Part shown: one piece after another, positions 3,976-51,060 of the stretch | Position numbering within the stretch: the stretch's first letter is position 1 | How the letters are laid out: each line of letters starts with the position of its first letter | Notes under the pieces: generated by a model | What the model was told of the DNA's origin: nothing | What the model saw: only the letters and a program-made list of their open reading frames with translations | Database searches by the model: none | IMG/VR virus record: IMGVR_UViG_3300028592_000004 | Location: 62,001 to 126,000 of that record | Length of the DNA: 64,000 nucleotides | Direction: 5' to 3' (one strand) | Program-made: the position numbers and the translations under genes

Positions 3976-3993
3976 TCAATTCCCGCGTTTTGA
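3976..3993. promoter_or_regulatory. 18-bp palindromic operator-like motif
   Basis: TCAATTCCCGCGTTTTGA (16/18), immediately before the DUF932-like gene. Confidence 0.65.
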
Positions 3994-4578
3994 TTAGCAG
4001 TGTGCCTCCACGAAGGATTCTAGAGTCTCGATCGTGTAAATCGAGGTGAGATTGCCGACTTTGAGGGGCCGCACGAACATCGGCGCGCGGACCGAGAAGT
4101 CGACGTGCGAGTCGTGCAGGACGACAAACTTCGAAATCCGCGGCCAGTTGAAGACCATCGCCATCGACCCGTCCGGCTGCAGATTCCGCTGCAGTTCAGC
4201 ATAGGCCCTGAAGATCTTCGTCTTCGTAAACCGCTTGAAGAGGTCGCTCAGGTCGAGATCCGACAGGTGCCAGAGTTTGGCAATCCCCAGCGTCACCGGA
4301 AATTCGAAGTACTGGTGGAACCAAGCACAGGAGAGCTTCGGCTTCCGCTGCCCGGTCGCTTCCTGCAAAGCCTCAAACAGAGGCTTCAGATCACCCTGCC
4401 GGCCGAGCTTCGCGATGACCGATCTGACGACAGCATCTTCGTAGGTGTTCGACCGCTCGACGATCGTGTCCTGCCAGACGGTGTCTAAACGATCGAAGGC
4501 GTGCCGGGCGGGATCCGCTTTACGCGGTTCCATGTCCGGACGCCTTCGTTGGATGAGCCGACGTCGTGCGTCAGTCAC
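3994..4578 (-). CDS. hypothetical protein
   Basis: 194-aa ORF coupled to recA stop. Confidence 0.65.
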   Translation of the reverse strand: MTDARRRLIQRRRPDMEPRKADPARHAFDRLDTVWQDTIVERSNTYEDAVVRSVIAKLGRQGDLKPLFEALQEATGQRKPKLSCAWFHQYFEFPVTLGIAKLWHLSDLDLSDLFKRFTKTKIFRAYAELQRNLQPDGSMAMVFNWPRISKFVVLHDSHVDFSVRAPMFVRPLKVGNLTSIYTIETLESFVEAHC

Positions 4579-6097
4579 TGTAGTCCTTCAGTTCTGCTTC
4601 GGAGACTTGACGGTTCGGAACGGCGTCCATCGCAGCGTCAACGTCGCCCTCGAAGTTGTCCGCCACGCTAGAATTGCCGACCAGAGCGCGATCCGTCTCA
4701 GCCATGTAGTAAGGCTTGTTGCGACCCTTCTCCAATCGCTTCAGCATCTTGTCGAAGTCGACTCCGGGTTCGTACGGACAGTACCGCGAGATCATGAACA
4801 GAGGATAGAGCTGATCCAGAAGATCAGGCCGATTCTCCAGCATGTTTCCCGCCACCGAGTACTTCACCGGGTGCGTCTTCGGAATGCCCAGCGCCTTGGA
4901 CCAGATCGTCTTCTGATTCGCGGGGTGCAGGTCGACAACGTCCTGAATCTGTTTCCACAGCGTCTTGTTAAACGTCTGCGTATGGAGCAGGATATCGATC
5001 GTCGCCTGATCCCAGTCCCAGTACGTCTGCTGACGGAACACCCCAGGCGAGTACTCGTAGGACCGCCACTTCATCTCAGCCTCGATCGACCGCTTGGACG
5101 GCGCGAGGCTGTTTTTGATGATCTGGAACTTGATGCGAACACCGCCGAACTGGTTCGTGTCGACGTCTTTCACGCGGACCATCTTCACCCGCAGTGACGC
5201 CATAAACTTCATGGCCTTGCCGCCCGGAACATTGTCCTGCGGCCGGCCGGCCGCGTCTGTGCCAGGCTTGAGGTGGTTCGTTGCAATGAACGACCAGGGC
5301 TTCTGCCGCATCCGGTCAGGCAACGTCTTGCAGTACTTTGAAATCTTGTAGGCCTCGATCGCGAACCCGCGATCGGCGTTTCCAGTGCTGTTGATCTTGT
5401 CGATGGTTTCTTCGTCAGCGGTGGCGGTGAGGCTGTCCAGCCCGAGACAGTACGGAAACAGCTTTCCGTGCTTGGCTTGAACGTCGGTGATCTGGTTCGT
5501 CCAGAACGTAATCGCCTTCTGCCAGTCCTGCAGCGAGTTAGTCGGATGCGACTTGACCCGCTTCGCAAATCGCGGATTTGCCAGCAGCGACTTCATCAGG
5601 ATCGCTGCATCCTTGTTCTCATTCTCAACGAGCGTGATCAGGGCTTCCTGGGCAGCATGCCACCGCATGATCTCGAACAGGAAGCTCGACTTGCAGGAGC
5701 CTTCCTGACCGAACAGTTCGGTGATGCGGCCCAACACCCACACGGTCATGCCGAAGAGGTACGACAGAGCGAACGACGGGAACGGGATCCCGACGATCCG
5801 CTTATCCATGTCGTCAGCACTGACGATGTCATCGCTGCCGGTCTCCTGGGCAACCTTCGCAACGATGGCGTCGATCAGGGTGTCAGAGAGAAACGCCTTC
5901 GGATCACTTCCCTTTTTCGTCCGGGCCTTGCCCTTCGCCGGCTTGGCATCTGCGTCGTCATCAGAAGCGGACGGATTGATCGGCCGGCGCTGCCTTTTCG
6001 GCGGTTGCCGAACAGGTGCTGCAACGTCTTCTTCGTCTTCGTCATCATCCTCGATGGCTGCGACAATTCGGTTGCGGTTTGTGCTTCGTGCAGTCAT
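4571..6097 (-). CDS. recA: RecA/UvsX-like recombinase
   Basis: GRITELFGQEGSCKS (Walker A), LGLDSLTA (Walker B), FIATNHLK, PGGKAMKFMASLRV; acidic N-terminal extension; start ATG 6097 or GTG 6109. Confidence 0.9.
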   Translation of the reverse strand: MTARSTNRNRIVAAIEDDDEDEEDVAAPVRQPPKRQRRPINPSASDDDADAKPAKGKARTKKGSDPKAFLSDTLIDAIVAKVAQETGSDDIVSADDMDKRIVGIPFPSFALSYLFGMTVWVLGRITELFGQEGSCKSSFLFEIMRWHAAQEALITLVENENKDAAILMKSLLANPRFAKRVKSHPTNSLQDWQKAITFWTNQITDVQAKHGKLFPYCLGLDSLTATADEETIDKINSTGNADRGFAIEAYKISKYCKTLPDRMRQKPWSFIATNHLKPGTDAAGRPQDNVPGGKAMKFMASLRVKMVRVKDVDTNQFGGVRIKFQIIKNSLAPSKRSIEAEMKWRSYEYSPGVFRQQTYWDWDQATIDILLHTQTFNKTLWKQIQDVVDLHPANQKTIWSKALGIPKTHPVKYSVAGNMLENRPDLLDQLYPLFMISRYCPYEPGVDFDKMLKRLEKGRNKPYYMAETDRALVGNSSVADNFEGDVDAAMDAVPNRQVSEAELKDYSD

Positions 6098-6111
6098 GCG
6101 CGTGCTCACAG

Positions 6112-6144
6112 AAAAGAAGCCCGGACCACAAGGATCCGGGCTTC
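6112..6144 (-). terminator. intrinsic terminator-like hairpin after the SSB-like gene
   Basis: Minus strand GAAGCCCGGA-9nt-TCCGGGCTTC followed by TTTT. Confidence 0.75.
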
Positions 6145-6168
6145 GGGTTCAGAACAGTATCGGACCGG

Positions 6169-9056: not shown

Positions 9057-9057
9057 C

Positions 9058-12000
9058 TCACTTCGCTTTCGGACAGAACTTATCCGGAATGCCCAGAGAC
9101 CGGACCTGGTCCTGGGTGAGCTCCTCACCCCAGTGCGTCATAATCTCGGCATCAAAGCCGAAATGGTAGGGCTTGGCGATCTCAATGTCGTCTCCGTGCA
9201 GCGTCTTCGGCCACACGTCAACGCCATAGACCAAGCAGGCCGGCAGAACCTCCTCAATCAACCACGGCAACGCCTTCGGGCTCAACTCGAACATCAGGGC
9301 GTCGTGGATCTGCAGCACCAGATGGAACCACTTCTTCGGACGCGACCCGTACTTTTCCCGGTACGCCAGCAAGTTATGGATGCCGATCGAAATCGCGTCC
9401 GCCACCGTCGACTGAATCGGGAAGTTGCAAGCCTGACGCTCCTGCTCAGCCAACTTTGCGCGATCGTCTGTGATCGCGAACCGCCGGTGTCGCATGAACG
9501 GATTGCAGATCCATCCCGGCTCGCTCACGCTGAACTTGCATTCCTCCAGGTACGGATAGGTCTCGGGGTAGAGGGTGAAGTAACCGTCGATCAGGCCCTG
9601 GGCCTCCTCGACTGTCAGCTCCGTCCCTTCTTCCTTCGACTTCCGCGCAATGGCGTCCGGACCAGACTGGTACGGAACACCGAAGTTCACGGTCTTCGCC
9701 CCGGTTCGCAGGTGGAGCTTGTTGATGCTCTTCAGTCCGCTCTTGTTCGGTGGGCAGTTCAGTTTGAACGCGGCCACAGCCGTTTGGGAGTGAAGATCGA
9801 GGTAGTCCTTGTGGTCCTCTGGCAGCAAGTTCCGCGACACGTCCGAGATCATCCGCGGATCCTGCGAAAGCCATGCCATCACGCACAGCTCCGCCGACTT
9901 CAAGTCGACTTCGACCAGGATCTTTCCGGGCGACGCACAGAGCATGCTCCGAATCGGGAAGGTGTACTTCGGGCCGACGATACGGGCATAGTCGCCCTCT
10001 CGCCGTTTTGAATTCCCGCAGATTGAAATCTTCCCCTCGCGGCGAACCACCAAATACGACGTCGGCACCTCCACGCAGTACACCGGACCCGAAAACGATT
10101 CGACAGTCTTCCTGATCGTCGACGTGAGCGTTGTGTTGCTCTTCATCGCCCGAACCCGATCGCTGTCGGCGTTGACGACGGCCTGCAGATTGTTCAGCGC
10201 GAAGATCGTCTGGACCCAGACCACCTGATCCTCATCAGCGGTGGTAAAGTCCCAATGGCGTCCCTTCCGAAACCAACGCTGGATCAGCTTCGGCAGAGCT
10301 GCAAATACCTCAGCCCGAAGCTGGAACACCCAGGAGCCGAATTCCAAGCCGGTCTTCGCCGCAAGATCACAGAGCCCCGGACTGTCCTCAAACTCGAAGA
10401 TCACCTGACGGTTCTCGCGAGTGAAGCGGTGTCGGAAGCCACTGAGGAAGGACAGGGCGGTGACGAGAGGTGTGATCAGATTGGACGCACAGGGAAGCGA
10501 AATTTTTCCGTTTCCCTTGGCGTCAAACTCCCCATAGCGCAGGAACGCCAGGAGAACGGTCAGAGATTCCGGCGAAAGCTCGACAGCCTCGGCTGGATCG
10601 ACCCCCTTGTACTGACCGCTGTGGAGATGAAGAAACCGCCAGTCTGTAGGGAAGTCCTTTGCTTCCACCTCACGAACACCGCCCTCATCGGTCCGGACAA
10701 GGCACCGGTGATTCGGCGTCACCCGAAGCGAGGTCGATCGAGACTCCAGTCGAACCAGATCGCCACGGTGGCTGAACTTCAGCAGATTCGTCTTGGCGAA
10801 GGAGATCTCACCCGTCTCGGAATCGTACTGAGCCACATGGAACGGTTTGCTCTTCGGCAGGTCGCAGACACGGCGCCAGCCGTCAGGCGTCAGAAACTCC
10901 GTGAAGTCGTCATAGCAGAGGTTCTGTAGATTCGGCCGGCTGGACGACACCCGTCCCGTTTCCACGGGATAGAAGTGCGTTCGCACACGACCGTCTGAGG
11001 CCACCGCAGCGAGCAGACCACCGGGGAAGACTTCGAAGTCGTCTTCGACGATGACCTGGCCCATGTCGTCCGTCTTTGGCGGGCGGAGCACACCCTTGAG
11101 CACCTGCGACACGAATCGGACGTCACGGAGCAAGCCGACCGTACCAGAGGTGTCCTGGTACGAGAGGATCCCCAGAACTTCCTTGTCGGTGCTGGGTGCG
11201 TACTCATGGGTCTTCTTCTGCTTGACAATCTTCTCCCAAGGCTGGGGACGCTTCCCCGCGGCCTTGATCGGAGTGAACTTCAGCGATTTGACCGTGAGCG
11301 GCAGGAACCGTTTTGCACCCTGAGTGCCGTTGTACTCCTCACCAAACAGCAGCTCGCGACACTGTGGCGCCGAGTTCGCATTGAACTCGTCGTATCTCAC
11401 CTTGTTCCGAAGCTCCTGCAGTTTGATGTCCTTCGCCTCCATGAAGATCTTCGTCAGGTAGCTGCCTCGCTCGCGGTCGACGTTCAGCCCACGCATCTCC
11501 ATCTCCAGGTAACCCGGGGAGGACATCATCGTGTGCAGGAACGCCTGACGAGAGCTACGACCGTACCGATCCTTGTCGAGCATGCCGGGCTTCTTGCCGC
11601 GGCCGTTGTACGCGCTGAACAGCCGACGTGTCCCGTCAGCGTCGTACATGCCGTAGGGATGAAGAATCCAGTTCGGACACTCGCCATATCCCTCCATGTT
11701 CTTCGCGGTCAGGTTATGCTTCTTGCAGAACCACTCCTTCCACTTCTGCAGAGCGTGGTCATACCGCGGCGTACCGACGTGCCGGACACACAGCGTCTCC
11801 AGCTTGAACTCGGCCGTCTCGCAGTGCGCATGCGCTGCAGCTCCTGTGTCGAAACCGCCGGACCACTTCGTCTGCTCTCCGCGCTCTTCGTCCGTGGCAT
11901 CATCATCAATCAGGTCGACCGCGAACTCGTCGCGAATGTCGATCCCGATGCTGAGGAGCCACGGAATGTCGGCACGGAGGAAGTGGCCGATGATCCGGAC

Positions 12001-13146
12001 CTTCCGCTTCTTCGTCGATTTCAGCAGACGATTGAGGTGATAGACAGCACGCGACAGCCCAGGCCGAAACGCGGGAACGCCACCCTGACTATGCAGGACC
12101 ACACAGACCGCCGACTTCGGCTTGTGGGAGAACTGGATGGTACGCAGGTAGGCTCCGGCGTCCTGGGGTCTCTCTCCGTGCCACTCGGCGTCGATTGCGA
12201 TGTTGAGCGACTCAGGATCCGGGTCGTTGATGATCTCGTCGACGATTGCTTCCAGATGGCGCTCCTTGAAGCACACAACGTGGCGAATGTCGTCTTCGAC
12301 GCGACCAGCGTACTTGCCGTTGACCAGGCCCCAGAACTGAGCCAAACCGTCGCGATGGTTTTCGTACTGCTCCGGTTGATGGAACACCGCAGACGGATGC
12401 GTAACGACCATCACCTTGGCCGTGTGGTATTTCGGCTCTTCGCCTTCCTGGTGCAGCGGGATGTTGTAGTCGGCGGTCATGCCGAACATCGTCCCAACGG
12501 CACCCGTCTTCCCGAGGAGCAGCTTGCCGGCCTCCGAACCGAAGCACAGGATGAACTTCGGCAGGATCAGCCGCATCTCCATTTCCAGGAGAGGCCGACA
12601 GTTCTTGACCCAATCCGTGGCCAAACCATCCGACGCCGGGTCGAGCTTCATGTGGTGGCAGATGTTGGTGACGTACCAGTTCTGCCAGTCCTCCGGCGGG
12701 ATCTGCACTTCGTCCAGAGCCCGATAGAGGTCAGACGCAGCCTGCCCAACGAAGTTCCGAAACTTGTCCACCTCGTCGATGCCGGGATGCTTGCCGATCA
12801 CCATCACGTCCGCCGGCCGCGGGCCATCCGGGTTTTCTTGTCCCCAGATATGGCCCGCGACGAACGGGACGTCTTTCACTGTCCGGGTCTTCTTGACCAC
12901 GATGTCCAGACAGAACTCGGGGTCGTACAAAGCTCGCCGGTACAGGTACTCCAGCCACTTGCCGTTTTCAACGACACGCTTCTTGTCGGACTTCCCATCC
13001 ACCTTGAGGGGAGCATCCCCGAGCAACTCTGCCGCACGAACAAAGTCCGGACCAGGCAGAGGCATCCCAGGCGCCGTGAACGGCACAATGGGGAACTCCT
13101 CCTCATCCATGAAGGGGAGGTCATTCTTGTCTGCTTTGGCAATCAT
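9058..13146 (-). CDS. polA: family A DNA polymerase with N-terminal UDG-like domain, 3'-5' exonuclease and an intein (SPO1-type architecture)
   Basis: UDG-like VMVIGKHPG..E...FVG and HPSAV; Exo IDAEW and YGMYDA; GRVSSSRPNLQN; motif A VDLKSAEL, motif B RTGAKTVNFGVPY, motif C LQIHDAL. Confidence 0.92.
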   Translation of the reverse strand: MIAKADKNDLPFMDEEEFPIVPFTAPGMPLPGPDFVRAAELLGDAPLKVDGKSDKKRVVENGKWLEYLYRRALYDPEFCLDIVVKKTRTVKDVPFVAGHIWGQENPDGPRPADVMVIGKHPGIDEVDKFRNFVGQAASDLYRALDEVQIPPEDWQNWYVTNICHHMKLDPASDGLATDWVKNCRPLLEMEMRLILPKFILCFGSEAGKLLLGKTGAVGTMFGMTADYNIPLHQEGEEPKYHTAKVMVVTHPSAVFHQPEQYENHRDGLAQFWGLVNGKYAGRVEDDIRHVVCFKERHLEAIVDEIINDPDPESLNIAIDAEWHGERPQDAGAYLRTIQFSHKPKSAVCVVLHSQGGVPAFRPGLSRAVYHLNRLLKSTKKRKVRIIGHFLRADIPWLLSIGIDIRDEFAVDLIDDDATDEERGEQTKWSGGFDTGAAAHAHCETAEFKLETLCVRHVGTPRYDHALQKWKEWFCKKHNLTAKNMEGYGECPNWILHPYGMYDADGTRRLFSAYNGRGKKPGMLDKDRYGRSSRQAFLHTMMSSPGYLEMEMRGLNVDRERGSYLTKIFMEAKDIKLQELRNKVRYDEFNANSAPQCRELLFGEEYNGTQGAKRFLPLTVKSLKFTPIKAAGKRPQPWEKIVKQKKTHEYAPSTDKEVLGILSYQDTSGTVGLLRDVRFVSQVLKGVLRPPKTDDMGQVIVEDDFEVFPGGLLAAVASDGRVRTHFYPVETGRVSSSRPNLQNLCYDDFTEFLTPDGWRRVCDLPKSKPFHVAQYDSETGEISFAKTNLLKFSHRGDLVRLESRSTSLRVTPNHRCLVRTDEGGVREVEAKDFPTDWRFLHLHSGQYKGVDPAEAVELSPESLTVLLAFLRYGEFDAKGNGKISLPCASNLITPLVTALSFLSGFRHRFTRENRQVIFEFEDSPGLCDLAAKTGLEFGSWVFQLRAEVFAALPKLIQRWFRKGRHWDFTTADEDQVVWVQTIFALNNLQAVVNADSDRVRAMKSNTTLTSTIRKTVESFSGPVYCVEVPTSYLVVRREGKISICGNSKRREGDYARIVGPKYTFPIRSMLCASPGKILVEVDLKSAELCVMAWLSQDPRMISDVSRNLLPEDHKDYLDLHSQTAVAAFKLNCPPNKSGLKSINKLHLRTGAKTVNFGVPYQSGPDAIARKSKEEGTELTVEEAQGLIDGYFTLYPETYPYLEECKFSVSEPGWICNPFMRHRRFAITDDRAKLAEQERQACNFPIQSTVADAISIGIHNLLAYREKYGSRPKKWFHLVLQIHDALMFELSPKALPWLIEEVLPACLVYGVDVWPKTLHGDDIEIAKPYHFGFDAEIMTHWGEELTQDQVRSLGIPDKFCPKAK
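10012..10917 (-). mobile_element. intein (~302 aa) in DNA polymerase with probably degenerate LAGLIDADG core
   Basis: Starts CYDDFTEFLTPDGW directly after PNLQNL; ends VYCVEVPTSYLVVRREGKISICGN followed by Ser. Confidence 0.9.
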
Positions 13147-18299: not shown

Positions 18300-18302
18300 T
18301 CT

Positions 18303-27516: not shown

Positions 27517-27534
27517 TCAATTCCCGGGGATTAA
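27517..27534. promoter_or_regulatory. 18-bp palindromic operator-like motif
   Basis: TCAATTCCCGGGGATTAA (16/18), 1 nt before hldE ATG. Confidence 0.65.
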
Positions 27535-29311: not shown

Positions 29312-30277
29312 CTACCGAAGAAATTCGCCAAACGCCGCGACGTTGCGTCGGCGGCACATGGCGTTGTAGAGGTCGACGACCTGATTCAGATCTCTCGATC
29401 GAAGAAGATACGTCGGGTAGCGCTGGACGCTGGCCAGGGCCTTGACTGCGTCCATCGGCGTGGGCTGCTCAATGCGCCGCACTTGGATTCGACCCAGACC
29501 GGACCGACTCGGATCACCGTAGACGGCTTCAGGAATCTGGGCACCAGCCGGATACAGCAACAACTGTCGGAACCGCATTGTCGGATGGGTTCCCTGTTTG
29601 TCGCCAGACAGGCTCATCACCTCAATCGCGCCGCTAGCCTCGAACTGGCGCATCATCTTCCGGGCTCGCCAGCGGTCGATCCGCGTGTCGATGAACTGTG
29701 TGAACGACATCTTCAGGCCGGCACGACGAATCGAGTAGAACTGCGGATCGTGCAGAACATGCTCATACACGGCATGTGAGTACGTTTCCGATCGAACAAC
29801 GAGGTCGTACTTCGTACAAGGCTGGGCAAGTCTCTGCCGGAACATCGACCAACCGTCGTCCTCTGGGTAGAGGTACGTGTCAGCCAGCTGCGGAAAGAGA
29901 ACTCGTTCGATCTGTTGCCAGCTGTTGCCAACGCGACGGGACCAACACCAGGGGCAGATGTTGGCGAGATTGCAATGTCGAAGGTTAAACGACTTGCCAC
30001 CCTCTTTGAGTCCGATGTCGCAACAGACGGGCATGCAGTTCAGAACATACGAGAGGTGATCTTCCCGATTGCCAGTGGTCTCCTCCCACCCGTTCTTCGT
30101 CAGCAACCCGACCCGAGCCCTCCAAATCGAAAGCACGGACGCCAGAGCCTCCTTAGTCGCCTGCTTGCCGGAAACAGGGTGACCGACGATCGTCGAAATG
30201 ACGGCGTAGATCTGAGAGAGGCTGAACGGACTCGCAATTTTCGGGTAGAGGATCTTGAGCGGCAGAATTTTCGGCAC
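29312..30277 (-). CDS. remote rolling-circle Rep (HUH family)-like protein with Zn knuckle, HUH motif lost
   Basis: CNLANICPWCWSRR (cf. Rep_1 C..RLCP.C.WRR), GAIEV, SVQRYP (cf. AKY), C-terminal AMCRRRNVAAFGEF. Confidence 0.45.
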   Translation of the reverse strand: MPKILPLKILYPKIASPFSLSQIYAVISTIVGHPVSGKQATKEALASVLSIWRARVGLLTKNGWEETTGNREDHLSYVLNCMPVCCDIGLKEGGKSFNLRHCNLANICPWCWSRRVGNSWQQIERVLFPQLADTYLYPEDDGWSMFRQRLAQPCTKYDLVVRSETYSHAVYEHVLHDPQFYSIRRAGLKMSFTQFIDTRIDRWRARKMMRQFEASGAIEVMSLSGDKQGTHPTMRFRQLLLYPAGAQIPEAVYGDPSRSGLGRIQVRRIEQPTPMDAVKALASVQRYPTYLLRSRDLNQVVDLYNAMCRRRNVAAFGEFLR

Positions 30278-30287: not shown

Positions 30288-30305
30288 TCAATTCCCGCGG
30301 ATTGA
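30288..30305. promoter_or_regulatory. 18-bp palindromic operator-like motif
   Basis: TCAATTCCCGCGGATTGA, 10 nt before the GTG at 30277; identical inverted copy at 36838. Confidence 0.7.
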
Positions 30306-30338
30306 ACCGGACGCAGAATAGCCAGTCGGAGGAGCCTG

Positions 30339-30412
30339 CACTACGTTATGTCGTCGAAAAACCCCCACTACGTTATGTCGACATAACCCAGTTACCTATT
30401 ACAAGGTAATAG
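30339..30412. repeat. direct repeat and palindrome cluster (iteron/origin-like)
   Basis: CACTACGTTATGTCG at 30339 and 30366; perfect palindrome GTTATGTCGACATAAC 30372-30387; CTATTAC-aag-GTAATAG 30396-30412. Confidence 0.75.
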
Positions 30413-30571
30413 TGCGCCTCCACGGACGGCCGCTCCGCTCGAAGAGCGGCGGAGCGTATGCCGTCGTGTCGGCGGAATGGGATCAAAATCACGCCACGAA
30501 TGAATAGTGGCCCGGTGTCACGATCCTTCGATCAACCGGGCCACGCTCCGCCACCGGGCGATTCGATTCCG

Positions 30572-33669: not shown

Positions 33670-33687
33670 TCAAAACCCGCGGATTGG
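33670..33687. promoter_or_regulatory. 18-bp palindromic operator-like motif
   Basis: TCAAAACCCGCGGATTGG (15/18), 13 nt before thyX ATG. Confidence 0.65.
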
Positions 33688-36813: not shown

Positions 36814-37282
36814 TGCTGTCCAGACCGGAGAAGCCTTTCAATCCGCGGGAATTGACCAGGTCGTCGATAGCCAGGCACGTTCTCGCGGCTGCGAAAGCGC
36901 ATGTCAATGGCCAGAAGAACGAGCCAAAGAGGAACATCACCAGTCCCGGCAGGTAGAGGATCGTCATCACGAGCCAGACAGCAGCAGTCTGAGCTTGATA
37001 CGTCATGAGATTCCAGCCGGCGTGGTAGAACCAGCTGTCGACGACGATTCCGAGTCCGAGCAGAACGGGGACTGAGAAGGTCAGGCAGAACTTGCAGAGC
37101 AGTCCCTCGCCCAGAAGTGCGAGGGCACTTTCGCGGACCCGGGCAAACCCCTTGTCGGAGTCTTCCGGTCCTTGCCACGTTTCGACCCTCGCCCGCCAGG
37201 GAGCGAAGAGGGAGCCTTTGAGCCAAACAGTGATCAAGCCTGAGCTGGCCAGGACAACGATCAGGAATTCGAAAACCGTCAT
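36632..37282 (-). CDS. membrane protein, DUF1360-like
   Basis: N-terminal TM helix, LGEGLLCKFCL (cf. GELL.CPWC), further TM helices. Confidence 0.55.
   Translation of the reverse strand: MTVFEFLIVVLASSGLITVWLKGSLFAPWRARVETWQGPEDSDKGFARVRESALALLGEGLLCKFCLTFSVPVLLGLGIVVDSWFYHAGWNLMTYQAQTAAVWLVMTILYLPGLVMFLFGSFFWPLTCAFAAARTCLAIDDLVNSRGLKGFSGLDSIGHDYELEVQQRRTEQEFTEELQNQHEKENDDGGKTTSRSAGGRRAASRSKSSDGEDTRD
36838..36855. promoter_or_regulatory. 18-bp palindromic operator-like motif
   Basis: TCAATCCGCGGGAATTGA, exact reverse complement of the 30288 site, inside a CDS 24 nt before the next gene. Confidence 0.65.
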
Positions 37283-37750: not shown

Positions 37751-37923
37751 CCTTGTTCATCGCGACTGTCTTTGAAGACGGCTTTGACGATCAGAGCGCA
37801 AGCACTGAAAAACAACCCGCCGGCCACCTCGAAGGCGAACTGCAGGAAGCCCAACTCAGTGCCGTGTGTCGGCGGACACGCTCGCAAACGAATGACTCGC
37901 TCGCGACGGAATTGATTACGCAT
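37735..37923 (-). CDS. possible small membrane protein
   Basis: MRNQFRR...FLQFAFEVAGGLFFSACALIVKAVF, one hydrophobic helix. Confidence 0.4.
   Translation of the reverse strand: MRNQFRRERVIRLRACPPTHGTELGFLQFAFEVAGGLFFSACALIVKAVFKDSRDEQGCRTE
37747..37756 (-). promoter_or_regulatory. CsrA-type binding hairpin on start codon
   Basis: ACA-AGGA-UGU containing the AUG at 37750. Confidence 0.55.
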
Positions 37924-39856
37924 GGAAGCGTTGACCCTTTCGGAACGTGCTGCACGTGCTCCCGCACGAGAGTGCAACCGCTATGACCGGCTGAAAGCCG
38001 ATTTGGATCGCCTGTTCGCCGACAGCCGGCGGGACAAGCGTGAAGTTGTCCGGATCGTCCGGGAGTACGTCGAGGAAGAGGAGCTTCCAACTCTTGAGCC
38101 CATTCTCCCTCTCCTACTGAATCTCAAGGGCAAGCCGTTCACGCTGTTTGAACACTTGCCCTTCTCACCGCTGTTCTTTACTCACTGCGCGCGGTCAGTG
38201 ATTTTCAAAACAGGGCGTCAGTGCGGTAAGTCAACCTCCATTTCTGCGTCGGGGATCCTGCAGGCGAACACGATCCCGAACTTCACAAATCTGTTCGTCA
38301 CGCCTCTGTACGAGCAGGCGCGTCGTCTGTCGAACAACTCGGTGCGGCCGTTCATCGACGAATCGCCGATGCGGCACCTGATGACGGGTGTGGGGATCGA
38401 GCAGAGCGTTCTGCAGCGATCGTTCCTGAACAAGTCGAAGCTCATGTTCTCGTTCGCGCTGATGGACGCGGACCGGACCCGCGGTATCTCCGCGGACCGG
38501 CTGTCCATCGACGAACTGCAGGACATGGATGCGGCGCATATCCCGATCATGATTGAAACCATGTCCCACTCCGATTGGGGCTGGCTGCAAATGACGGGTA
38601 CGCCGAAGACATTGGACAACACGCTTGAAGAAAAGTGGATCCGATCGTCCCAGGCAGAGTGGTTCATTCCCTGCACGCATTGCACGACCGGCGGGCAGCC
38701 GACGCTGAATATCCCGGCCCGTGAGCACCACCTGCTCGACATGATCGGGCCGTACCACGACTTCATCTCGGAACAGAATCCGGCGATCATTTGCCACAAG
38801 TGCCGCAAACCGATCAACGCACTGTACGGCCGGTGGGTACACCGCTATCCGGAGCGTCGCTGGACCAGTGCTGGATACCACATCCCGCAGCTGATCCTTC
38901 CGCTGCACTACGCCCGTCCGGACAAATGGCAGGTCTTCCTGTCGAAGATGCAGGGCGGAACCACCAGCCCCGCCACGTTCTTCAACGAAGTGCTCGGGGA
39001 ATCGTACGACAAGGGCACCAAGCTCATCAGCTTGACTGAGCTGCAGTCTGCGGCCTGCCTCGACTACGAGAACAGTGGTCGAATGCCGAGTGCCAAGGTG
39101 ATCGAAGCAGCCAACGACAGCCGGTACGTCTGCCGTGTTCTAGCAATCGACTGGGGTGGTGGCGGTGAGGACGAAATCAGCTTCACGACGATGGCCTTCC
39201 TGGGCATGCGGCACAACGGCCAGATCGAGGTGATCTGGGGTCGCCGTCTGCTCACGCCGAACGATCACCTTCGGGAAGCCGAGCAGGTCTTCGCGGTCTG
39301 GCAGATGCTCCGGCCGGACGTTGTCGCGCACGACTTCACCGGTGCCGGCGCCTTCCGAGAAGACTTCATGGTCTCCGCCGGGGTGCCGCTGGAGACCATC
39401 ATGCCCGTCGCATATGTGCGGGCTGCCAGCTCCCGGATCATCCAGCACGTCCCAGCCACCATCCACCTGCCGCGGGACCACTACCGCGTCGACAAGACGC
39501 ACACGCTGCTGTTGACCAGCCAGTGCATCCGTCGCCAGATGGTCCGCTTCTTCAAGTGGGACAACAAGGGCGAAGAGGATCGCGGTCTGCTGTTCGACTT
39601 CATGTCCCTCATCGAAGAGAAGATCCACGGTCGGACGGCCGGCGACGTCTACCTCATCAAGCGCGGAACCGGCCCGGACGACTTCGCCCAGGCCGTCAAC
39701 ATCGGTTGTTTGGCGATCTGGCACACCCAGGACGCCTGGCCGAACTTCGTCAGCGGCGCTAAGTGGCACGTCAAGAAGGAGCAGGAGTGGGCCACGGGCA
39801 GCCGCGACCACGGCTGGGAGAACGACCGAGGCGACAGCTACTTCCAGACGCCCTAG
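37922..39856 (+). CDS. terL: terminase large subunit (lambda GpA-type with Zn finger)
   Basis: KTGRQCGKST, SIDELQD, TGTPK, CTHC/CHKC, GYHIPQL, nuclease LAIDWG and DDFAQA. Confidence 0.9.
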   Translation: MEALTLSERAARAPARECNRYDRLKADLDRLFADSRRDKREVVRIVREYVEEEELPTLEPILPLLLNLKGKPFTLFEHLPFSPLFFTHCARSVIFKTGRQCGKSTSISASGILQANTIPNFTNLFVTPLYEQARRLSNNSVRPFIDESPMRHLMTGVGIEQSVLQRSFLNKSKLMFSFALMDADRTRGISADRLSIDELQDMDAAHIPIMIETMSHSDWGWLQMTGTPKTLDNTLEEKWIRSSQAEWFIPCTHCTTGGQPTLNIPAREHHLLDMIGPYHDFISEQNPAIICHKCRKPINALYGRWVHRYPERRWTSAGYHIPQLILPLHYARPDKWQVFLSKMQGGTTSPATFFNEVLGESYDKGTKLISLTELQSAACLDYENSGRMPSAKVIEAANDSRYVCRVLAIDWGGGGEDEISFTTMAFLGMRHNGQIEVIWGRRLLTPNDHLREAEQVFAVWQMLRPDVVAHDFTGAGAFREDFMVSAGVPLETIMPVAYVRAASSRIIQHVPATIHLPRDHYRVDKTHTLLLTSQCIRRQMVRFFKWDNKGEEDRGLLFDFMSLIEEKIHGRTAGDVYLIKRGTGPDDFAQAVNIGCLAIWHTQDAWPNFVSGAKWHVKKEQEWATGSRDHGWENDRGDSYFQTP

Positions 39857-46560: not shown

Positions 46561-46915
46561 CTTTCCGCTCGCAGAACACGTTGTCATGCAACCACCGCAG
46601 TTCAGCTTCGATGGCTTGCTGATGGAGATCGAACGGACCGAGAACCGGTCCAGCGCTAGGAGTCATGTCGGCCCACCAGGCGGCGGGAAAGTGAAAGAGG
46701 AGAAACGCAAGACCCAGGTCGAGACCGGTCTCGGGCATGACCTTCTGCGTCATGAGGCTGTGTATCGCCTCATCCGACAGCTCCTCGGTTGGCTCGACGC
46801 GGCTGGCTCGGGACCGCGTCATAGAACCCATCTTGTTGAAAAACGGCACGAGCGAATCAGCGTGAACCGACTCGATCGTACCGTCCGGACGAATCACAAG
46901 GTCGACAGTCTTCAC
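46505..46915 (-). CDS. small conserved protein of the DUF1257/DUF2997 module
   Basis: LVIRPDGTIESVH...RASRVEP and LGPF...QAIEAELRWL. Confidence 0.65.
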   Translation of the reverse strand: MKTVDLVIRPDGTIESVHADSLVPFFNKMGSMTRSRASRVEPTEELSDEAIHSLMTQKVMPETGLDLGLAFLLFHFPAAWWADMTPSAGPVLGPFDLHQQAIEAELRWLHDNVFCERKDAHNDQDQAEGGTPAGAE

Positions 46916-47091
46916 TGCGACACACGCTCCCGTTCCGTCTCCGTGGGCGTCTTGTCTTCCCGGTTCTCGACCAGGCCCAGCTTCTCTTCGAGAGGCCGGG
47001 TGGCGATCTTACAGGCATCGCCGCTGAAGCCCACAGCGTTGATGTTGGTCTTCCCCTGCGGGCTGATCGTGATCTCGATGTACTTTTCCAT
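46912..47091 (-). CDS. DUF2997 protein
   Basis: Manually translated MEKYIEITISPQGKTNINAVGFSGDACKIATRPLEEKLG... (59 aa). Confidence 0.8.
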   Translation of the reverse strand: MEKYIEITISPQGKTNINAVGFSGDACKIATRPLEEKLGLVENREDKTPTETERERVSQ

Positions 47092-47127
47092 CCGAGTTCG
47101 CGCTTTCTGTTGAGGGTGAGGAATGGA

Positions 47128-47490
47128 TCAGAGGACGGGTACACGCATCCGGATTGAGCCGTCCGTGAGGACTTCTCGCTCCGAAATGAAGTAGCCCTGC
47201 TCCTGGACGTAGGCGAGGGCGCCTTCTTCCGCGTACCGGCAGACGACCTCATCAAAGGCCTTCTGCCCAGCACGCCGGGCGTCTGCGTCCGTCGACACCT
47301 GACCGGTGGTCAGATCGACGACGCACGGATAGTGCCAGCCGCGAGGCCAGAATCCCAGACCGTCGACGGTCTGGCTACCCCACAGCTTGTGCTTGCCCTG
47401 AACCGGGGCCTTGAGACCGAGAGCCGCACAAGCCTTCTCCAAAAGGACGCGGTCCTTGAACTCGGTCTGGACGTTCACACGATGCGACAT
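47128..47490 (-). CDS. DUF1257 (Ycf35-like) protein
   Basis: MSH...TEFKD...LEKAC..LG, GWHYP.V.D..TG, DGSI.M. Confidence 0.8.
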   Translation of the reverse strand: MSHRVNVQTEFKDRVLLEKACAALGLKAPVQGKHKLWGSQTVDGLGFWPRGWHYPCVVDLTTGQVSTDADARRAGQKAFDEVVCRYAEEGALAYVQEQGYFISEREVLTDGSIRMRVPVL

Positions 47491-47500
47491 GACGAACCTT

Positions 47501-49189
47501 TCAGTTGGTGTCGAGGTTACGAGCCCGGCTGGGCCGTCTCGTGCTCCTCGACTCTTTGGTGGCGGGACGGGCGAACGAGCTGCAGAACTTGCGGATTTCA
47601 TCCAGCATGTCCTTCTGGCTCTTGAAGATCGTACTCTCGCCGCGCTTGGCGGCGGCTTCTTCGATCATCTCCAGGGTGGGCACGTGACGGCCATGCTCGA
47701 AGGCCGTCAGCCGCGAGTTGATGACGACGTCCTCCAGTTCCGATCCGACGAAGTTTTCCGTCATATCGAGAACAGAGCGCCACTTGTCGCTGCCGAGCTC
47801 TTTTTCGAGCCGCTCGATGCTGACTCCGCGCTTGGCGAAGTGAACTTCCAGGATCTCCCTGCGAACGTTGGGCGAGGGGACATCCGTGAAGTACGTCTCA
47901 TCGAACCGCCGGAAGAACTCTGGCGCCACGCCGGCGACGGAGTTCATCGTGACGACGATGAACGTGTCGTTCCGCTCCTCCTGCATCCAGTTCAGGAGCC
48001 GGCCGCGGACGCGGTTGGCGACTTCGTGTCCGCCGTCCGCGCTCTGCCCCATCGTCTTTTCGAACTCGTCGAAAACGGCGACGCAGCCGCGGTGCGCAGA
48101 CAGCTTGGTCAGCACGTTCTCCAGCCGATTCTCTGACTGACCGACGTACTGTCCGAAGATCTCACCGACGTTCACCCAGTAGCTGGGGAACGCCTGGCCG
48201 CAGACCTCCTGGAAGATGCCTGCGATGATCTTCGCGAACTGCGACTTCCCGGAGCCCGGGACGCCGATCAGCGCGATGCCGCGAGGCGTGTCGAGCTTCG
48301 CTTCCTTGCCGCCGTCCGTGTAGGCGAGGGCTCGACGACGAATATCCGGGATGCAGTTGTCGAAGCCGCACACCTCGTCGAGGTTCGGGATTTGATTCGG
48401 CGAGATGTACTTGAGCACACCGCCGGAACCGACCAGCCGCGCCTTCTGATCCCGGATCGTGAGCATCATCTCGGGGCAGAACCCCTTCTGCTCGATGATG
48501 GCCAGCGACAGGGCGTCGGATGCCTGCTGTCGGGAGAGGCCCCGCAGCGACGCGGAGATGCTGTTCCGCATCCCCGGTTCGAGTTCCTTCGTCTTATCGC
48601 CCCGACCGTGCTGGAACGACGCATGGACGTAGTCCACGATCGATCCGAGCTCTTCCTGATTCGGATGCGGAAGCGGCAAGGGCTGCAGCAGGTGCTGCAG
48701 CTCCGGATGGAGCGTCGGCACCGACTGGATGAAGAAGATCGGCCGCGAGAACGTCGCGTTCGACAGTTGCTGCTCGACGATCAGGTTCTGGAGCAGCTGT
48801 CTGGCTGTGACCGACTGGTCCAGCACGGCATGCAGGTTGTGCATGACGACGATCGCCGACTGGATCATCGACGGGAGCGCTGTCAGGACGCTCAGTGCCT
48901 GGATTGGATCCCGGTACTTCGCTTCGCCCAGAAGATCCTTCTGCTGAGTCGCGGCGGCGCCCTTTACGATGAAGCCGCGGTGGACGTCCCACTGAATGAA
49001 GCTGTAGGTCGCCAGGTCCTTCTTCGTTTGCCGGCGAGCGTCCATCTCAGTGGCGACGCTCTCAAGAATCATGGCCGCGTTTCGCGGCTCTTCGGTCTGC
49101 ACGACGACGGCCTGAAAGCCGGCACGAACCAGATTCGTGGCCTGTCGCGTGAACTCAGTTTGATGCTGCTTGATCTTCAGATCGGCCAT
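47501..49189 (-). CDS. Ycf46-like AAA+ ATPase
   Basis: GVPGSGKS, VFDEFEK, TMN...PEFFRRFDE; inactive N-terminal AAA-like module. Confidence 0.85.
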   Translation of the reverse strand: MADLKIKQHQTEFTRQATNLVRAGFQAVVVQTEEPRNAAMILESVATEMDARRQTKKDLATYSFIQWDVHRGFIVKGAAATQQKDLLGEAKYRDPIQALSVLTALPSMIQSAIVVMHNLHAVLDQSVTARQLLQNLIVEQQLSNATFSRPIFFIQSVPTLHPELQHLLQPLPLPHPNQEELGSIVDYVHASFQHGRGDKTKELEPGMRNSISASLRGLSRQQASDALSLAIIEQKGFCPEMMLTIRDQKARLVGSGGVLKYISPNQIPNLDEVCGFDNCIPDIRRRALAYTDGGKEAKLDTPRGIALIGVPGSGKSQFAKIIAGIFQEVCGQAFPSYWVNVGEIFGQYVGQSENRLENVLTKLSAHRGCVAVFDEFEKTMGQSADGGHEVANRVRGRLLNWMQEERNDTFIVVTMNSVAGVAPEFFRRFDETYFTDVPSPNVRREILEVHFAKRGVSIERLEKELGSDKWRSVLDMTENFVGSELEDVVINSRLTAFEHGRHVPTLEMIEEAAAKRGESTIFKSQKDMLDEIRKFCSSFARPATKESRSTRRPSRARNLDTN

Positions 49190-50630: not shown

Positions 50631-50673
50631 TAGCTAAAAGAAAGGCTGATGGTTAAGGGGCAGGGCATAGTAG

Positions 50674-50762
50674 GCACCTCACGCAGAATGCTCAATTCGG
50701 AATTCGCGGCCCGCCGGAACGGGCCTATTCGAAATTCGATATTGAGCACCCTGCGGAGGTGC
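50674..50762. other. long intergenic imperfect hairpin (~89 nt)
   Basis: GCACCTC/GAGGTGC, CGCAG/CTGCG, TGCTCAAT/ATTGAGCA and GGCCCG/CGGGCC nested arms. Confidence 0.75.
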
Positions 50763-50775
50763 GCGAGGACGTGCC

Positions 50776-50991
50776 TCAGACAGTGACCAGCAGACGCTGA
50801 TCGACCGTGTACGTGGGGTTCTCGGGGAACCGGAGTTCGGCTCGCTCAGCAGCAGCCGAATAGATTTCATGGGCCGCGGCGGTCAAAGGCACTTCAGCGA
50901 TCCGATCGCTGAGGCCGCGAAGGTGAAGGAGATTCAGTCCAGTTGATGCCAGCATGGCGTCAACGACGGGGTGCCAGGTGTGGGTGGCCAT
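50776..50991 (-). CDS. small hypothetical protein
   Basis: 71 aa from ATG 50991, downstream of operator motif. Confidence 0.55.
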   Translation of the reverse strand: MATHTWHPVVDAMLASTGLNLLHLRGLSDRIAEVPLTAAAHEIYSAAAERAELRFPENPTYTVDQRLLVTV

Positions 50992-51042
50992 TGCAGAAGT
51001 CCTCAAGTTGCCGGCTTCTCCGAGGTGCCGACGAGCCTCATT

Positions 51043-51060
51043 TCAATGCACGGGTATTAA
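51043..51060. promoter_or_regulatory. 18-bp palindromic operator-like motif (degenerate)
   Basis: TCAATGCACGGGTATTAA (14/18 on the reverse strand), directly after a strong terminator. Confidence 0.5.

What the first reader, a model, noticed from the sequence alone, without database searches (positions are those of the whole stretch)
3976..51060. Recurrent 18-bp palindrome TCAATTCCCGCGGATTGA just upstream of six genes
Seen: copies at 3976 (16/18), 27517 (16/18), 30288 (18/18), 33670 (15/18), 36838 (18/18, inverted) and 51043 (14/18). They lie 1-51 nt before the starts of the DUF932-like gene, hldE, the Rep-like gene, thyX, the gene upstream of rnhA and a small gene after a terminator. Three are followed on the coding strand by AAGG. 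The ends TCAA/TTGA are the conserved part. Inference: this is the operator of a dimeric regulator (phage or host) that co-controls heptose synthesis, dTMP synthesis and replication genes. It lies too close to hldE to be a -35 element.
Basis: partly seen in the sequence, partly recalled or inferred. Interest (0 to 1): 0.7.

Follow-up and report, generated by a model that had tools for sequence, protein, structure and literature searches.

The report
Dispersed palindromic protein-binding sites in a jumbo phage
An 18-20 bp near-palindrome is real and sits at about 21 gene junctions of a 229-kb soil jumbo phage; it is most likely a genome-wide set of binding sites for a dimeric phage DNA-binding protein, not the operator of a small regulon.

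Summary
All six copies are at the stated coordinates, against 0.04 expected by chance. A seventh copy lies inside the DNA polymerase gene at 10009.

The window is part of a 229,210-bp uncultured soil jumbo phage. The phage encodes its own multisubunit RNA polymerase and a sigma factor, and nearly all its genes are on the minus strand. Genome-wide there are 21 strong and 2 degenerate copies, with nothing intermediate.

- Copies face either way relative to the genes (11 versus 10).
- Conservation is symmetric between the two half-sites.
- Variants are not compensatory and the hairpin is weak.

These features point to double-stranded DNA bound by a dimer, not to a promoter or an RNA element.

Nineteen of 21 copies sit at gene junctions, often replacing the ribosome-binding spacer that a sister phage has at the matching junction. 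The downstream genes span most modules of the genome, not one pathway.

Seven of the eight sister-phage records checked carry a different dispersed palindrome (WWGATATCWW). It lies mostly inside genes and is held in place by selection. One sister shares this motif's outer arms.

I read the motif as a lineage-specific version of a family-wide site array. The reader protein and its effect remain unknown.

The parts
3976..3993 (.). Motif copy (16/18). The stop of gene 3994-4533(-) abuts it. The ATG of the DUF932-like gene (2808-3971, -) follows after 4 nt.
10009..10026 (.). Motif copy (16/18) inside the UDG-exonuclease-intein-PolA gene (9058-13146, -). It encodes SICGN|S at the intein C-terminal junction.
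27517..27534 (.). Motif copy (16/18). The TAA stop of the 68-aa CxxC...CxxC ORF (27531-27737, -) lies inside it. The hldE ATG (27515) follows after 1 nt, with no separate Shine-Dalgarno sequence.
30288..30305 (.). Perfect copy at the downstream end of a ~280-nt non-coding stretch. AAGGAAG and then GTG (30277) of the 321-aa Zn-binding 'Rep-like' gene follow after 10 nt.
33670..33687 (.). Motif copy (15/18). The stop of the ATP-dependent DNA ligase gene (33689-34819, -) lies 1 nt before it. AAGGA and then the thyX ATG (33656) follow after 13 nt.
36838..36855 (.). Perfect copy in the opposite orientation, inside ORF 36632-37282(-) at codons 143-148. This is where the region homologous to the 125-129-aa orthologues ends.
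51043..51060 (.). Motif copy (14/18, 32-bit matrix score) just after an intrinsic terminator on the minus strand. A 12-codon ORF starts 1 nt after it and a 71-aa ORF 51 nt after it.
29312..30277 (-). 321-aa Zn-binding protein with a ferredoxin-like C-terminal domain ('Rep-like'). It is a fast-evolving gene present in all four compared phages. Its role as reader of the palindromes is inference only.

Best explanation
The motif (T)TCAAT-CCGCGGGW-ATTGA(A) is a set of about 21-23 binding sites on double-stranded DNA. They are recognised by a sequence-specific, probably homodimeric, phage-encoded DNA-binding protein and are spread over the whole 229-kb genome at roughly 10-kb intervals.

It is this lineage's version of a feature shared by its sister phages. 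Seven of the eight sister records checked carry a dispersed palindrome (WWGATATCWW types). The recognised sequence has shifted between lineages.

In this phage the 18-20 bp site is almost confined to cistron junctions. There it often takes the place of the usual ribosome-binding spacer.

Shown here:
- the array of sites exists;
- its conservation is symmetric;
- it is independent of orientation;
- it lies at junctions;
- it is specific to this lineage;
- the sisters have analogous arrays under purifying selection.

Inferred:
- a dimeric protein binds the sites;
- the primary role is genome-wide (marking or organising phage DNA, or global rather than gene-specific control);
- a bound protein at a junction would also act as an orientation-independent barrier to RNA polymerase between gene blocks.

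The reader protein is not identified.
For: - Enrichment: 6 copies in the window against 0.04 expected. Genome-wide there are 19 at 3 or fewer mismatches against 0 for the reversed control, and 21 when W is allowed.
- The matrix scores are bimodal. The 21 sites score at least 30.9 bits; the next best score 20.6, 14.7 and 14.0; no shuffle reaches 14.
- Orientation relative to the uniformly minus-strand genes is 11 versus 10.
- Information content is symmetric between half-sites (r = 0.87). Invariant positions are AA/TT and the core CGGG.
- Natural variants are not compensatory. The RNA hairpin is only -3.5 to -5.3 kcal/mol and drops to -0.4/-0.5 in real variants.
- Nineteen of 21 copies lie outside called genes and 14 have the upstream stop codon abutting or inside them. 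In 17-18 copies a start codon follows within 31 nt, against 14% of random non-coding positions within 35 nt.
- Three of four syntenic junctions in sister phage G003 hold an ordinary 9-14-nt spacer (two with a clear Shine-Dalgarno sequence) where this phage has the motif; the fourth is a 143-nt gap.
- Sister arrays are abundant. G003 has 42 copies of AGATATCT, G001 has 26-40 copies, and G002 has 31 copies of TGATATCA extended to CTCAWTGATATCAWTGAG, with the same outer arms TCAWT/AWTGA.
- Four further sister records carry 9-40 copies each against 0 for the control. This phage has none of that type.
- Between G003 and G001, 17 of 21 alignable sites keep the palindrome in place while flanks are about 25% diverged. 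At two places G002 has converted the sequence in situ.
- No bacterial genome holds multiple copies, and no other viral contig has the motif.
Against: - No reader protein was identified. No ParB_N domain is detectable. The only clear helix-turn-helix protein is the sigma factor, and its recognition helix does not co-vary with the palindromes.
- The core is consistently asymmetric. One half reads CCGC and the other WCCC in 20 of 21 sites. A strictly symmetric dimer does not require this; copying from one founder would explain it equally well.
- In the sisters most sites lie inside genes, whereas here they cling to gene starts. The two arrays may therefore not do the same thing.
- Spacing here is not significantly regular (CV 0.69, P = 0.06).
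- No expression or binding data exist. No RNA run was listed.
Confidence: 0.5

Rival explanations
1. One reading: a classical operator at the promoters of a small regulon. A dimeric repressor or activator co-controls heptose synthesis, dTMP synthesis and replication genes.
For: - The site has dyad symmetry and a symmetric conservation profile.
- Copies lie directly before hldE, thyX and the Rep-like gene.
- One copy follows a terminator.
- One copy (3976) lies about 22 nt downstream of a good sigma-70-like promoter match.
- Where the gap is long (30288, genome 45248, 51043), the site sits nearer the downstream start than the upstream stop.
Against: - The 21-23 copies precede genes of many modules, most of unknown function.
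- Fourteen copies abut or overlap the upstream stop codon inside co-directional gene strings.
- There is no excess of promoter-like sequence upstream once the motif itself is excluded (P = 0.22).
- The motif is absent upstream of orthologous thyX and at syntenic junctions in relatives.
- Sister phages keep their palindromes mostly inside genes, far from starts.
Confidence: 0.15
2. A promoter, or the core of one, for the phage's own RNA polymerase and sigma factor. It would give very short or no leaders.
For: - The phage encodes a beta-beta'N fusion, a beta'C subunit and a sigma-70-family factor.
- The homologous proteins of the nearest isolate, Salmonella phage Arash, are found in virions (PMC10585845).
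- This is the only high-information recurrent motif found in the non-coding DNA.
- A sharp, nearly identical family of sites is typical of phage-polymerase promoters (own knowledge of T7-type promoters).
- One copy follows a terminator.
Against: - Orientation is 11 versus 10 relative to genes that all run one way. Half the copies would fire antisense.
- In at least 5 cases the ATG follows after 1-2 nt, so any start site would have to lie inside the motif.
- The conservation profile is symmetric.
- Sister-phage palindromes sit at random positions within genes, up to more than 1 kb from the next start.
- The sigma region-4 helix is the same in G001-G003 although the extended arms of their palindromes differ.
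Confidence: 0.08
3. An RNA-level element: an intercistronic hairpin or a translational operator at the ribosome-binding site. It would be read by an RNA-binding protein such as the phage's CsrA homologue, or would serve as a processing or stabilising structure.
For: - Copies lie 1-31 nt before start codons and replace the Shine-Dalgarno spacer.
- A full-length CsrA homologue is encoded at 29037-29228(-) and is conserved in sister phages.
- Both orientations give RNAs identical at 14 of 18 positions (read directly from the sequence).
Against: - The hairpin is weak and real variants abolish it, with almost no compensatory change.
- GGA, the defining CsrA contact (own knowledge), is present in only 12 of 21 copies and is absent from the sister palindromes.
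- There is no U tract.
- Sister palindromes inside genes are conserved at the DNA level in all reading frames.
Confidence: 0.07
4. A selfish or recombination-derived repeat. All copies descend from one founder and were spread by a nuclease or transposase (REP/RAYT-like, HUH Rep-like) or by gene conversion, with no function for the phage.
For: - The asymmetric core (CCGC on one side, WCCC on the other) is kept in 20 of 21 copies whichever way the site faces.
- Scores are sharply bimodal.
- The motif is lineage-specific and looks like an insertion at syntenic junctions.
- One copy sits at an intein boundary.
- A perfect copy lies directly before a Zn-binding protein whose C-terminal domain weakly resembles HUH nuclease folds.
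Against: - The pattern of invariant positions is symmetric and non-uniform. Eight of 18 positions never vary.
- The analogous sister palindromes are under clear purifying selection.
- No HUH motif or Rep_1 match was found, and the fold matches are below the noise line (Z at most 6.3).
- An 18-bp unit is far shorter than known mobile palindromic elements (own knowledge).
Confidence: 0.12

Closest known systems
17-bp dyad-symmetric repeats of Cluster O mycobacteriophages (TGTTCGGNNNCCGAACA; PMC4351075)
   Same: Both are 17-18 bp palindromes with tens of copies spread through a phage genome. Many copies lie in short intergenic gaps. There is no meaningful orientation relative to transcription, few copies are near promoters, a dimeric binding protein is suspected, and the function is unknown.
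   Different: About a third of the Cluster O repeats lie inside genes, and they are described as not closely linked to start codons. Here 19 of 21 copies are at junctions and 17-18 lie within 31 nt of a start. The host, phage type and sequence are unrelated. Here the sister phages carry a different palindrome, which documents a shift in specificity.
Stoperators of Cluster A mycobacteriophages (L5/D29 type; PMC9283540, PMC6550527)
   Same: Both comprise many copies of one binding site in short intergenic spaces between co-directional genes. In Cluster A, a protein bound there stops elongating RNA polymerase. This is the model for the barrier effect I infer.
   Different: Stoperators are asymmetric 13-mers, are oriented with transcription, and are bound by a monomeric immunity repressor of a temperate phage. 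The present sites are symmetric and orientation-free, and the phage shows no sign of lysogeny in what was examined.
Start-associated sequences (SAS) of Cluster K mycobacteriophages (as cited in PMC4351075)
   Same: Both are a conserved repeat immediately upstream of the start codons of a subset of genes, occupying the ribosome-binding region.
   Different: By my own knowledge of the Cluster K description, SAS is an asymmetric 13-mer that contains the Shine-Dalgarno sequence at a fixed short distance, in one orientation. Here the distance varies from 1 to 31 nt, both orientations occur, and a separate Shine-Dalgarno sequence appears whenever the gap is long.
Dispersed palindromic sites of chromosome or plasmid organisers and global regulators (KorB-OB of IncP plasmids, ParB-parS, Noc-NBS, SlmA-SBS, MatP-matS; own knowledge)
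   Same: These are 12-16 bp palindromes with 10-70 copies spread over a replicon. Many lie inside genes. They are bound by dimers, and their specificity differs between relatives. This matches the sister-phage arrays in particular.
   Different: No ParB_N domain is detectable in this genome. No organiser protein was identified. The present copies are junction-bound.

Membership tests
Classical operator of a dimeric transcription factor | Dyad symmetry with a symmetric conservation profile | tested here: met
   Seven of 9 position pairs are complementary. Half-site information content correlates at r = 0.87.
Classical operator of a dimeric transcription factor | Overlaps or adjoins a promoter | tested here: not met
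   There is no excess of sigma-70-like promoter scores upstream once the motif is excluded (P = 0.22). Fourteen of 21 sites abut or overlap the upstream stop codon inside gene strings. Promoters of the phage's own sigma factor are unknown, so this test covers host-type promoters only.
Classical operator of a dimeric transcription factor | Conserved upstream of orthologous genes | tested here: not met
   The motif is absent upstream of thyX homologues, at four syntenic junctions of G003 and in five relatives' genomes.
Classical operator of a dimeric transcription factor | Cognate regulator identified | tested here: inconclusive
   Pfam and PHROG scans of about 100 proteins found only the sigma factor, a weak HTH_ParB/DUF1016_N hit and a Zn-ribbon ORF. 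The complex prediction was not folded.
Phage RNA-polymerase promoter (T7- or N4-like) | One orientation, matching the direction of transcription | tested here: not met
   Eleven copies face one way and 10 the other, while nearly all genes are on the minus strand.
Phage RNA-polymerase promoter (T7- or N4-like) | Transcripts start at a fixed position of the motif | not testable with these tools
   No RNA run was listed for this phage.
Cluster A stoperator | Asymmetric site oriented with transcription | tested here: not met
   The site is a pseudo-palindrome found in both orientations.
Cluster A stoperator | Many copies in short intergenic gaps of co-directional genes | tested here: met
Cluster O-type dispersed dyad repeat | 17-18 bp dyad repeat with tens of dispersed copies, no orientation preference, mostly not at promoters | tested here: met
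   the family description is from PMC4351075.
Cluster K start-associated sequence | Asymmetric motif containing the Shine-Dalgarno sequence at a fixed short distance from the start | tested here: not met
   The distance varies from 1 to 31 nt, both orientations occur, and separate Shine-Dalgarno sequences appear when the gap is at least 9 nt.
Intrinsic terminator or structured RNA element | Stable stem kept by compensatory changes (plus a U tract for terminators) | tested here: not met
   The hairpin is -3.5 to -5.3 kcal/mol and falls to -0.4/-0.5 in natural variants. There is no U tract. Only one symmetric double change was seen (genome 162590).
ParB-parS / KorB-OB system | A ParB_N-domain protein encoded on the replicon | tested here: not met
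   The six-frame search with PF02195 found nothing at E <= 1. The only related signal is a weak HTH_ParB hit (E = 0.004) in the DUF1016_N protein.
CsrA/RsmA binding site | An invariant GGA, usually in a hairpin loop at the Shine-Dalgarno sequence | tested here: not met
   GGA is present in 12 of 21 copies and never in the predicted loop (read). A CsrA homologue does exist.
REP/RAYT or HUH-Rep-associated repeat | An HUH/Y1 nuclease encoded in the genome | tested here: inconclusive
   The Rep_1 HMM found nothing. The 321-aa protein has only sub-threshold fold resemblance to HUH domains. A Y1 transposase model was not searched.

The most novel reading that the evidence does not exclude
A clade of uncultured soil jumbo phages, which carry their own sigma factor and RNA polymerase, keeps a co-evolving pair: a sequence-specific reader protein and an array of 20-50 palindromic sites on the phage chromosome. 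This would be a phage counterpart of parS, matS, SBS or KorB-OB arrays, used for marking or organising the phage's own DNA, or for global control. In this phage the recognised sequence has switched from a 10-12 bp GATATC type to an 18-20 bp CCGCGG type with the same outer arms. That switch forced the sites out of genes and into cistron junctions, where they replace ribosome-binding spacers and may have gained a role as transcription or translation boundaries.
Probability: 0.3. Interest if true: 0.75.

Novelty: new variant of a known kind. Interest (0 to 1): 0.55.

Why it matters
Dispersed palindromes in phage genomes have been noted before, for example in Cluster O mycobacteriophages, but their function is unknown. 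This case adds three things.

- There is a whole clade in which the array is kept while the recognised sequence changes.
- There is direct evidence of purifying selection on such sites, even inside genes: 17 of 21 stay in place across about 25% flank divergence.
- There is a lineage in which the sites have moved to gene junctions and displaced the ribosome-binding spacer.

This gives a comparative handle for finding the reader protein and for asking what such arrays do. Candidate roles are marking or organising phage DNA, global transcriptional barriers, or both.

For annotation, it warns against reading "palindrome before gene X" as a pathway-specific operator.

Tried and rejected
- **Exact motif in other sequence collections.** IMG/VR gave 0 hits. 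One genome per prokaryote species gave 56 single hits. Several of these are the codons F-N-P-R-E-L of response regulators, some are shared by related MAGs, and none is a multi-copy genome. A host operator is therefore rejected as far as the collection reaches.
- **Protein-guided searches for close relatives.**
  - The Rep-like protein found nothing in viral contigs.
  - My first metagenome scan was wasted on the low-complexity acidic protein.
  - ThyX found only 49-55% relatives without the motif.
- **Population data.** Logan contigs of four soil metagenomes hold near-identical strains. A few SNPs lie near the copies at 27517 and 30288 but none inside them. The numbers are too small to show selection.
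- **RNA evidence.** No RNA run was listed.
- **Other motifs.** K-mer enrichment and a Gibbs sampler found no other convincing non-coding motif apart from Shine-Dalgarno sequences and terminator tails.
- **Terminator association.** Only 1 of 21 sites follows an intrinsic terminator.
- **Sigma-70-type promoters upstream.** The apparent excess (P = 0.006) came from the motif's own arm. It vanished when the motif was excluded.
- **Reader hunt by co-variation.** I looked for proteins alike in G001 and G003 but different in G002. The top hit was a beta-rich 131-137-aa protein that I judged a probable virion protein and not a DNA binder.
- **Sigma factor as reader.** Rejected, because its recognition helix is the same in G001-G003.
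- **ParB.** None was found.
- **The 321-aa 'Rep-like' protein.**
  - The single-sequence model was unusable (pLDDT 40).
  - The model built with an alignment was good (pLDDT 86.5), but Foldseek and VIA-align gave only sub-threshold HUH-like or ferredoxin-like matches.
  - The profile search against PDB sequences found nothing.
  - Its orthologues in G001-G003 have no palindrome directly upstream.
- **Complex prediction.** The job with two copies of that protein plus the site DNA was not folded by the tool. It is not evidence either way.
- **Salmonella phage Arash.** The first 50 kb of this nearest isolate shows no comparable palindrome. The rest was not examined.
- **Regular spacing in this phage.** Not significant (CV 0.69, P = 0.06).


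Full report
**Check of the observation**

The expectation is 0.04, and none of 100 dinucleotide-preserving shuffles reaches six. The sixth, at 51043, is 14/18 in the inverted reading and scores with the others in a weight-matrix scan.

**Where the window comes from**

The window is bases 62001-126000 of a 229,210-bp IMG/VR virus record. The record comes from soil, has 61% G+C and is rated complete.

Genome-wide there are 19 copies at 3 or fewer mismatches, against 0 for the reversed control. Allowing the variable W position gives 21.

A matrix built from these copies gives a sharply two-peaked score distribution. The 21 sites score at least 30.9 bits. The next best score 20.6 (genome 142104), 14.7, 14.0 (genome 168514) and 11.8. 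No shuffled genome reaches 14. The hits at 142104 and 168514 lie at junctions and look like decayed copies.

**The genome**

A codon-usage gene caller that I wrote for this genome places nearly all genes on the minus strand. The only solid plus-strand genes are the large terminase (window 37922-39856) and one other.

The phage encodes:
- a fused RNA polymerase beta-beta'N subunit of 1486 aa;
- a beta'C subunit;
- a 248-aa protein with sigma-70 regions 2, 3 and 4.

The nearest isolate is Salmonella phage Arash, at about 30% identity. There the homologous polymerase subunits and sigma factor are found in virions (PMC10585845).

The window itself is a replication, recombination and nucleotide-metabolism region. 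It also contains sugar-modification genes.

**Anatomy of the motif**

The consensus is TCAATCCGCGGGWATTGA, extended by T before it (15/21) and A after it (17/21).

- Seven of the nine position pairs are complementary.
- Positions 3-4 (AA), 9-12 (CGGG) and 15-16 (TT) never vary.
- Information content in the two halves correlates at r = 0.87.
- Relative to the coding strand, 11 copies face one way and 10 the other.

The variants that occur do not restore pairing. Examples are TCAAAAC for TCAATCC, and TTTTGA for WATTGA. Only one site (genome 162590) has a symmetric double change.

As RNA the consensus folds at only -3.5 to -5.3 kcal/mol. Real variants fold at -0.4 or -0.5.

Orientation independence, a symmetric profile and no structural covariation point to recognition of double-stranded DNA by a two-fold symmetric protein. 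They argue against a promoter, a terminator or a structured RNA.

One feature does not fit a purely symmetric reader. The core is consistently asymmetric: one half reads CCGC and the other WCCC in 20 of 21 copies, whichever way the site faces.

**Position of the copies**

Nineteen of 21 copies lie outside called genes.

- In 14 copies the upstream gene's stop codon abuts the motif or lies inside it. Several times the motif's own terminal TGA, or a TAA in its first arm, serves as the stop.
- In 17-18 copies a start codon follows within 31 nt. By comparison, 14% of random non-coding positions lie within 35 nt of a start.
- Five times the arrangement is ATTGA-A-ATG, with no separate Shine-Dalgarno sequence. 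When the gap is 9 nt or more, an AAGGA-type Shine-Dalgarno sequence follows the motif.

The two in-gene copies are special cases:
- The copy at 10009 encodes the last five residues of the polymerase intein plus the +1 serine.
- The copy at 36838 lies just beyond the part of a membrane protein that is homologous to its shorter orthologues.

Only one copy follows an intrinsic terminator. Host-type promoter scores upstream are not raised once the motif's own arm is excluded.

The downstream genes are of many kinds: HldE, ThyX, a 5'-nucleotidase, a glycosyltransferase, a portal-like protein, conserved genes of unknown function and small early-type ORFs. This is not one pathway.

**Comparison with relatives**

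The motif occurs in no other IMG/VR contig. In one genome per prokaryote species it occurs only as single matches, several of them the codons F-N-P-R-E-L of response regulators.

Eight related viral records were found through the polymerase, at about 54% identity. They lack the motif in the fetched loci and, for the five searched whole, genome-wide. ThyX homologues in metagenomes (49-55% identity) have nothing like it upstream.

Four junctions are syntenic with the complete relative G003. At three of them G003 has an ordinary 9-14-nt spacer where this phage has the motif (one of those is the degenerate copy at genome 142104). At the fourth G003 has a 143-nt gap.

**The relatives have palindromes of their own**

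- G003 has 42 copies of AGATATCT, extended to AWAGATATCTWT.
- G001 has the same type.
- G002 has 31 copies of TGATATCA, extended to CTCAWTGATATCAWTGAG.
- Records G004, G006, G007 and G008 carry 9-40 copies of WNGATATCNW against 0 for the control. G005 has only a near-chance 8.
- Single 20-kb pieces hold 5-8 copies against 0.05-0.08 expected.
- This phage has none of that type.

In these sisters 60-70% of copies lie inside genes, in all frames and at all relative positions. Non-coding DNA is nevertheless enriched three- to five-fold.

Between G003 and G001, 17 of 21 alignable sites keep the palindrome exactly in place, although the flanks are about 25% diverged. Between G003 and G002 only 2 of 16 sites coincide, and there the sequence has been converted in place, for example AAAGATATCTTT to TTTGATATCAAA.

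G002's outer arms (TCAWT ... AWTGA) are the same as those of the present motif. Its core has six bases instead of eight.

I conclude that the clade maintains an array of dispersed palindromic sites under selection, that the recognised sequence changes between lineages, and that the present motif is most likely this lineage's version.

**What it most likely does**

I commit to this reading: an array of binding sites for a dimeric, sequence-specific, phage-encoded DNA-binding protein, acting genome-wide and not on one pathway. My confidence is about 0.5.

In the sisters the sites cannot be gene-start signals, so the ancestral role is probably at the level of the DNA molecule. Marking or organising phage DNA, or global control, are the candidates. 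Bacterial and plasmid arrays such as KorB-OB, parS, NBS, SBS and matS work this way (own knowledge).

An 18-20 bp G+C-rich site can hardly be written into coding sequence. That alone would push the copies into junctions. But the copies also lie nearer to downstream starts than chance placement in non-coding DNA would give. I therefore consider it likely that a protein bound there also acts as an orientation-independent barrier between gene blocks, as stoperators do in Cluster A mycobacteriophages (PMC9283540). That step is inference.

**The reader protein**

- The sigma factor's recognition helix does not co-vary with the palindromes.
- No ParB domain is present.
- The 321-aa protein behind the perfect copy at 30288 is more interesting. 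It has an invariant Cys cluster and a confident model (pLDDT 86.5). A profile of its 43 homologues finds one orthologue in each of G001-G003.
- That protein evolves faster than the genome average. It is 62% identical between G003 and G001 and 39% between G003 and G002, against proteome means of 71% and 60%.
- Its resemblance to HUH Rep nucleases is below the noise line. Its orthologues have no palindrome directly upstream. It is a candidate only.

**Rivals**

- A founder-copy or selfish repeat: about 0.12. This is the reading that best explains the conserved asymmetric core.
- A promoter of the phage polymerase: about 0.08.
- An RNA-level element, possibly linked to the phage CsrA homologue at 29037-29228: about 0.07.

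**Comparison with known systems, and novelty**

The closest described case is the 17-bp dyad repeat of Cluster O mycobacteriophages. It is also dispersed, orientation-free, mostly away from promoters and of unknown function (PMC4351075).

Stoperators and start-associated sequences share the junction position. They fail the symmetry and orientation tests.

I class the finding as a new variant of a known kind. The new elements are the clade-wide conservation of the array together with a switch in the recognised sequence, the direct evidence of selection, and the confinement to junctions in this lineage.

Noticed in passing
Loci L028-L038 (G003), L100-L109 (G002), L110-L117 (G001); records G004, G006-G008: Sister jumbo phages carry 20-50 dispersed copies of WWGATATCWW-type palindromes. 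Most lie inside genes. Seventeen of 21 are kept in place between G003 and G001, and two are converted in place in G002. Spacing in G003 is more even than random (CV 0.55-0.66).
   Followed up: yes
window 29037-29228 (-): A full-length CsrA/RsmA homologue of 63 aa (Pfam E = 2e-15). It is conserved in sister phages G002 and G003 and lies in the gene string headed by the perfect motif copy at 30288. A phage-encoded global translational regulator is notable in itself.
   Followed up: partly
window 9058-13146 (-): The DNA polymerase is a single 1362-aa fusion of a uracil-DNA-glycosylase-like domain, a 3'-5' exonuclease and PolA. An intein of about 300 aa (C...GN|S) interrupts it. The intein is absent from the roughly 1045-aa orthologues in G002 and G003.
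   Followed up: partly
whole genome G000; G003: Several 6-bp palindromes are completely absent from this phage: CTCGAG (0 vs 95 expected), GGGCCC (0 vs 53), CCATGG (0 vs 41), AAGCTT (0 vs 40), ATGCAT and TACGTA. G003 lacks GCCGGC (0 vs 127). This looks like avoidance of restriction sites.
   Followed up: no
genome 165567-172978 and 133353-134099 (loci L015, L016, L013): The phage has its own multisubunit RNA polymerase, a beta-beta'N fusion plus beta'C, and a divergent sigma-70-family factor. All are conserved in the sisters. The homologues in Salmonella phage Arash are virion proteins (PMC10585845). No promoter motif for this enzyme could be found.
   Followed up: partly
window 30306-30571: The ~280-nt non-coding stretch upstream of the perfect copy contains a direct repeat CGACATAACGTAGTG (twice, 11 nt apart) and an inverted repeat CTATTAC...GTAATAG. 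No sigma-70-like promoter or terminator was found there.
   Followed up: partly
window 25306-27515 and 52389-55166; genome 46907-47974, 185624-186481, 195391-195996: There is a set of sugar-modification genes: HldE (heptose kinase/adenylyltransferase), a GT9 heptosyltransferase fused to GT2, further glycosyltransferases and a sulfotransferase. They suggest heptose-based glycosylation of phage or host structures.
   Followed up: no
window 27769-28995 (-): A 408-aa highly acidic low-complexity protein with EEEDEEE and KSSKSSK repeats. Its repeat region attracts hundreds of unrelated metagenome contigs when reads are laid on it, and it has weak DNA similarity to genes in Burkholderia, Xanthomonas and Rhizobium jumbo phages.
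   Followed up: no
window 46912-49189 (-): A DUF2997 + DUF1257 + AAA-ATPase gene trio, conserved in the sister phages.
   Followed up: no
window 62093-63967 (-): A 624-aa protein with collagen triple-helix repeats, probably a fibre.
   Followed up: no
G003 (L028-L038); G001: There are further high-copy words unrelated to the palindromes: GCAGTTCGGTACC... (15 copies) in G003 and GGACCTGTGGGACC (7 copies) in G001. Neither was examined.
   Followed up: no
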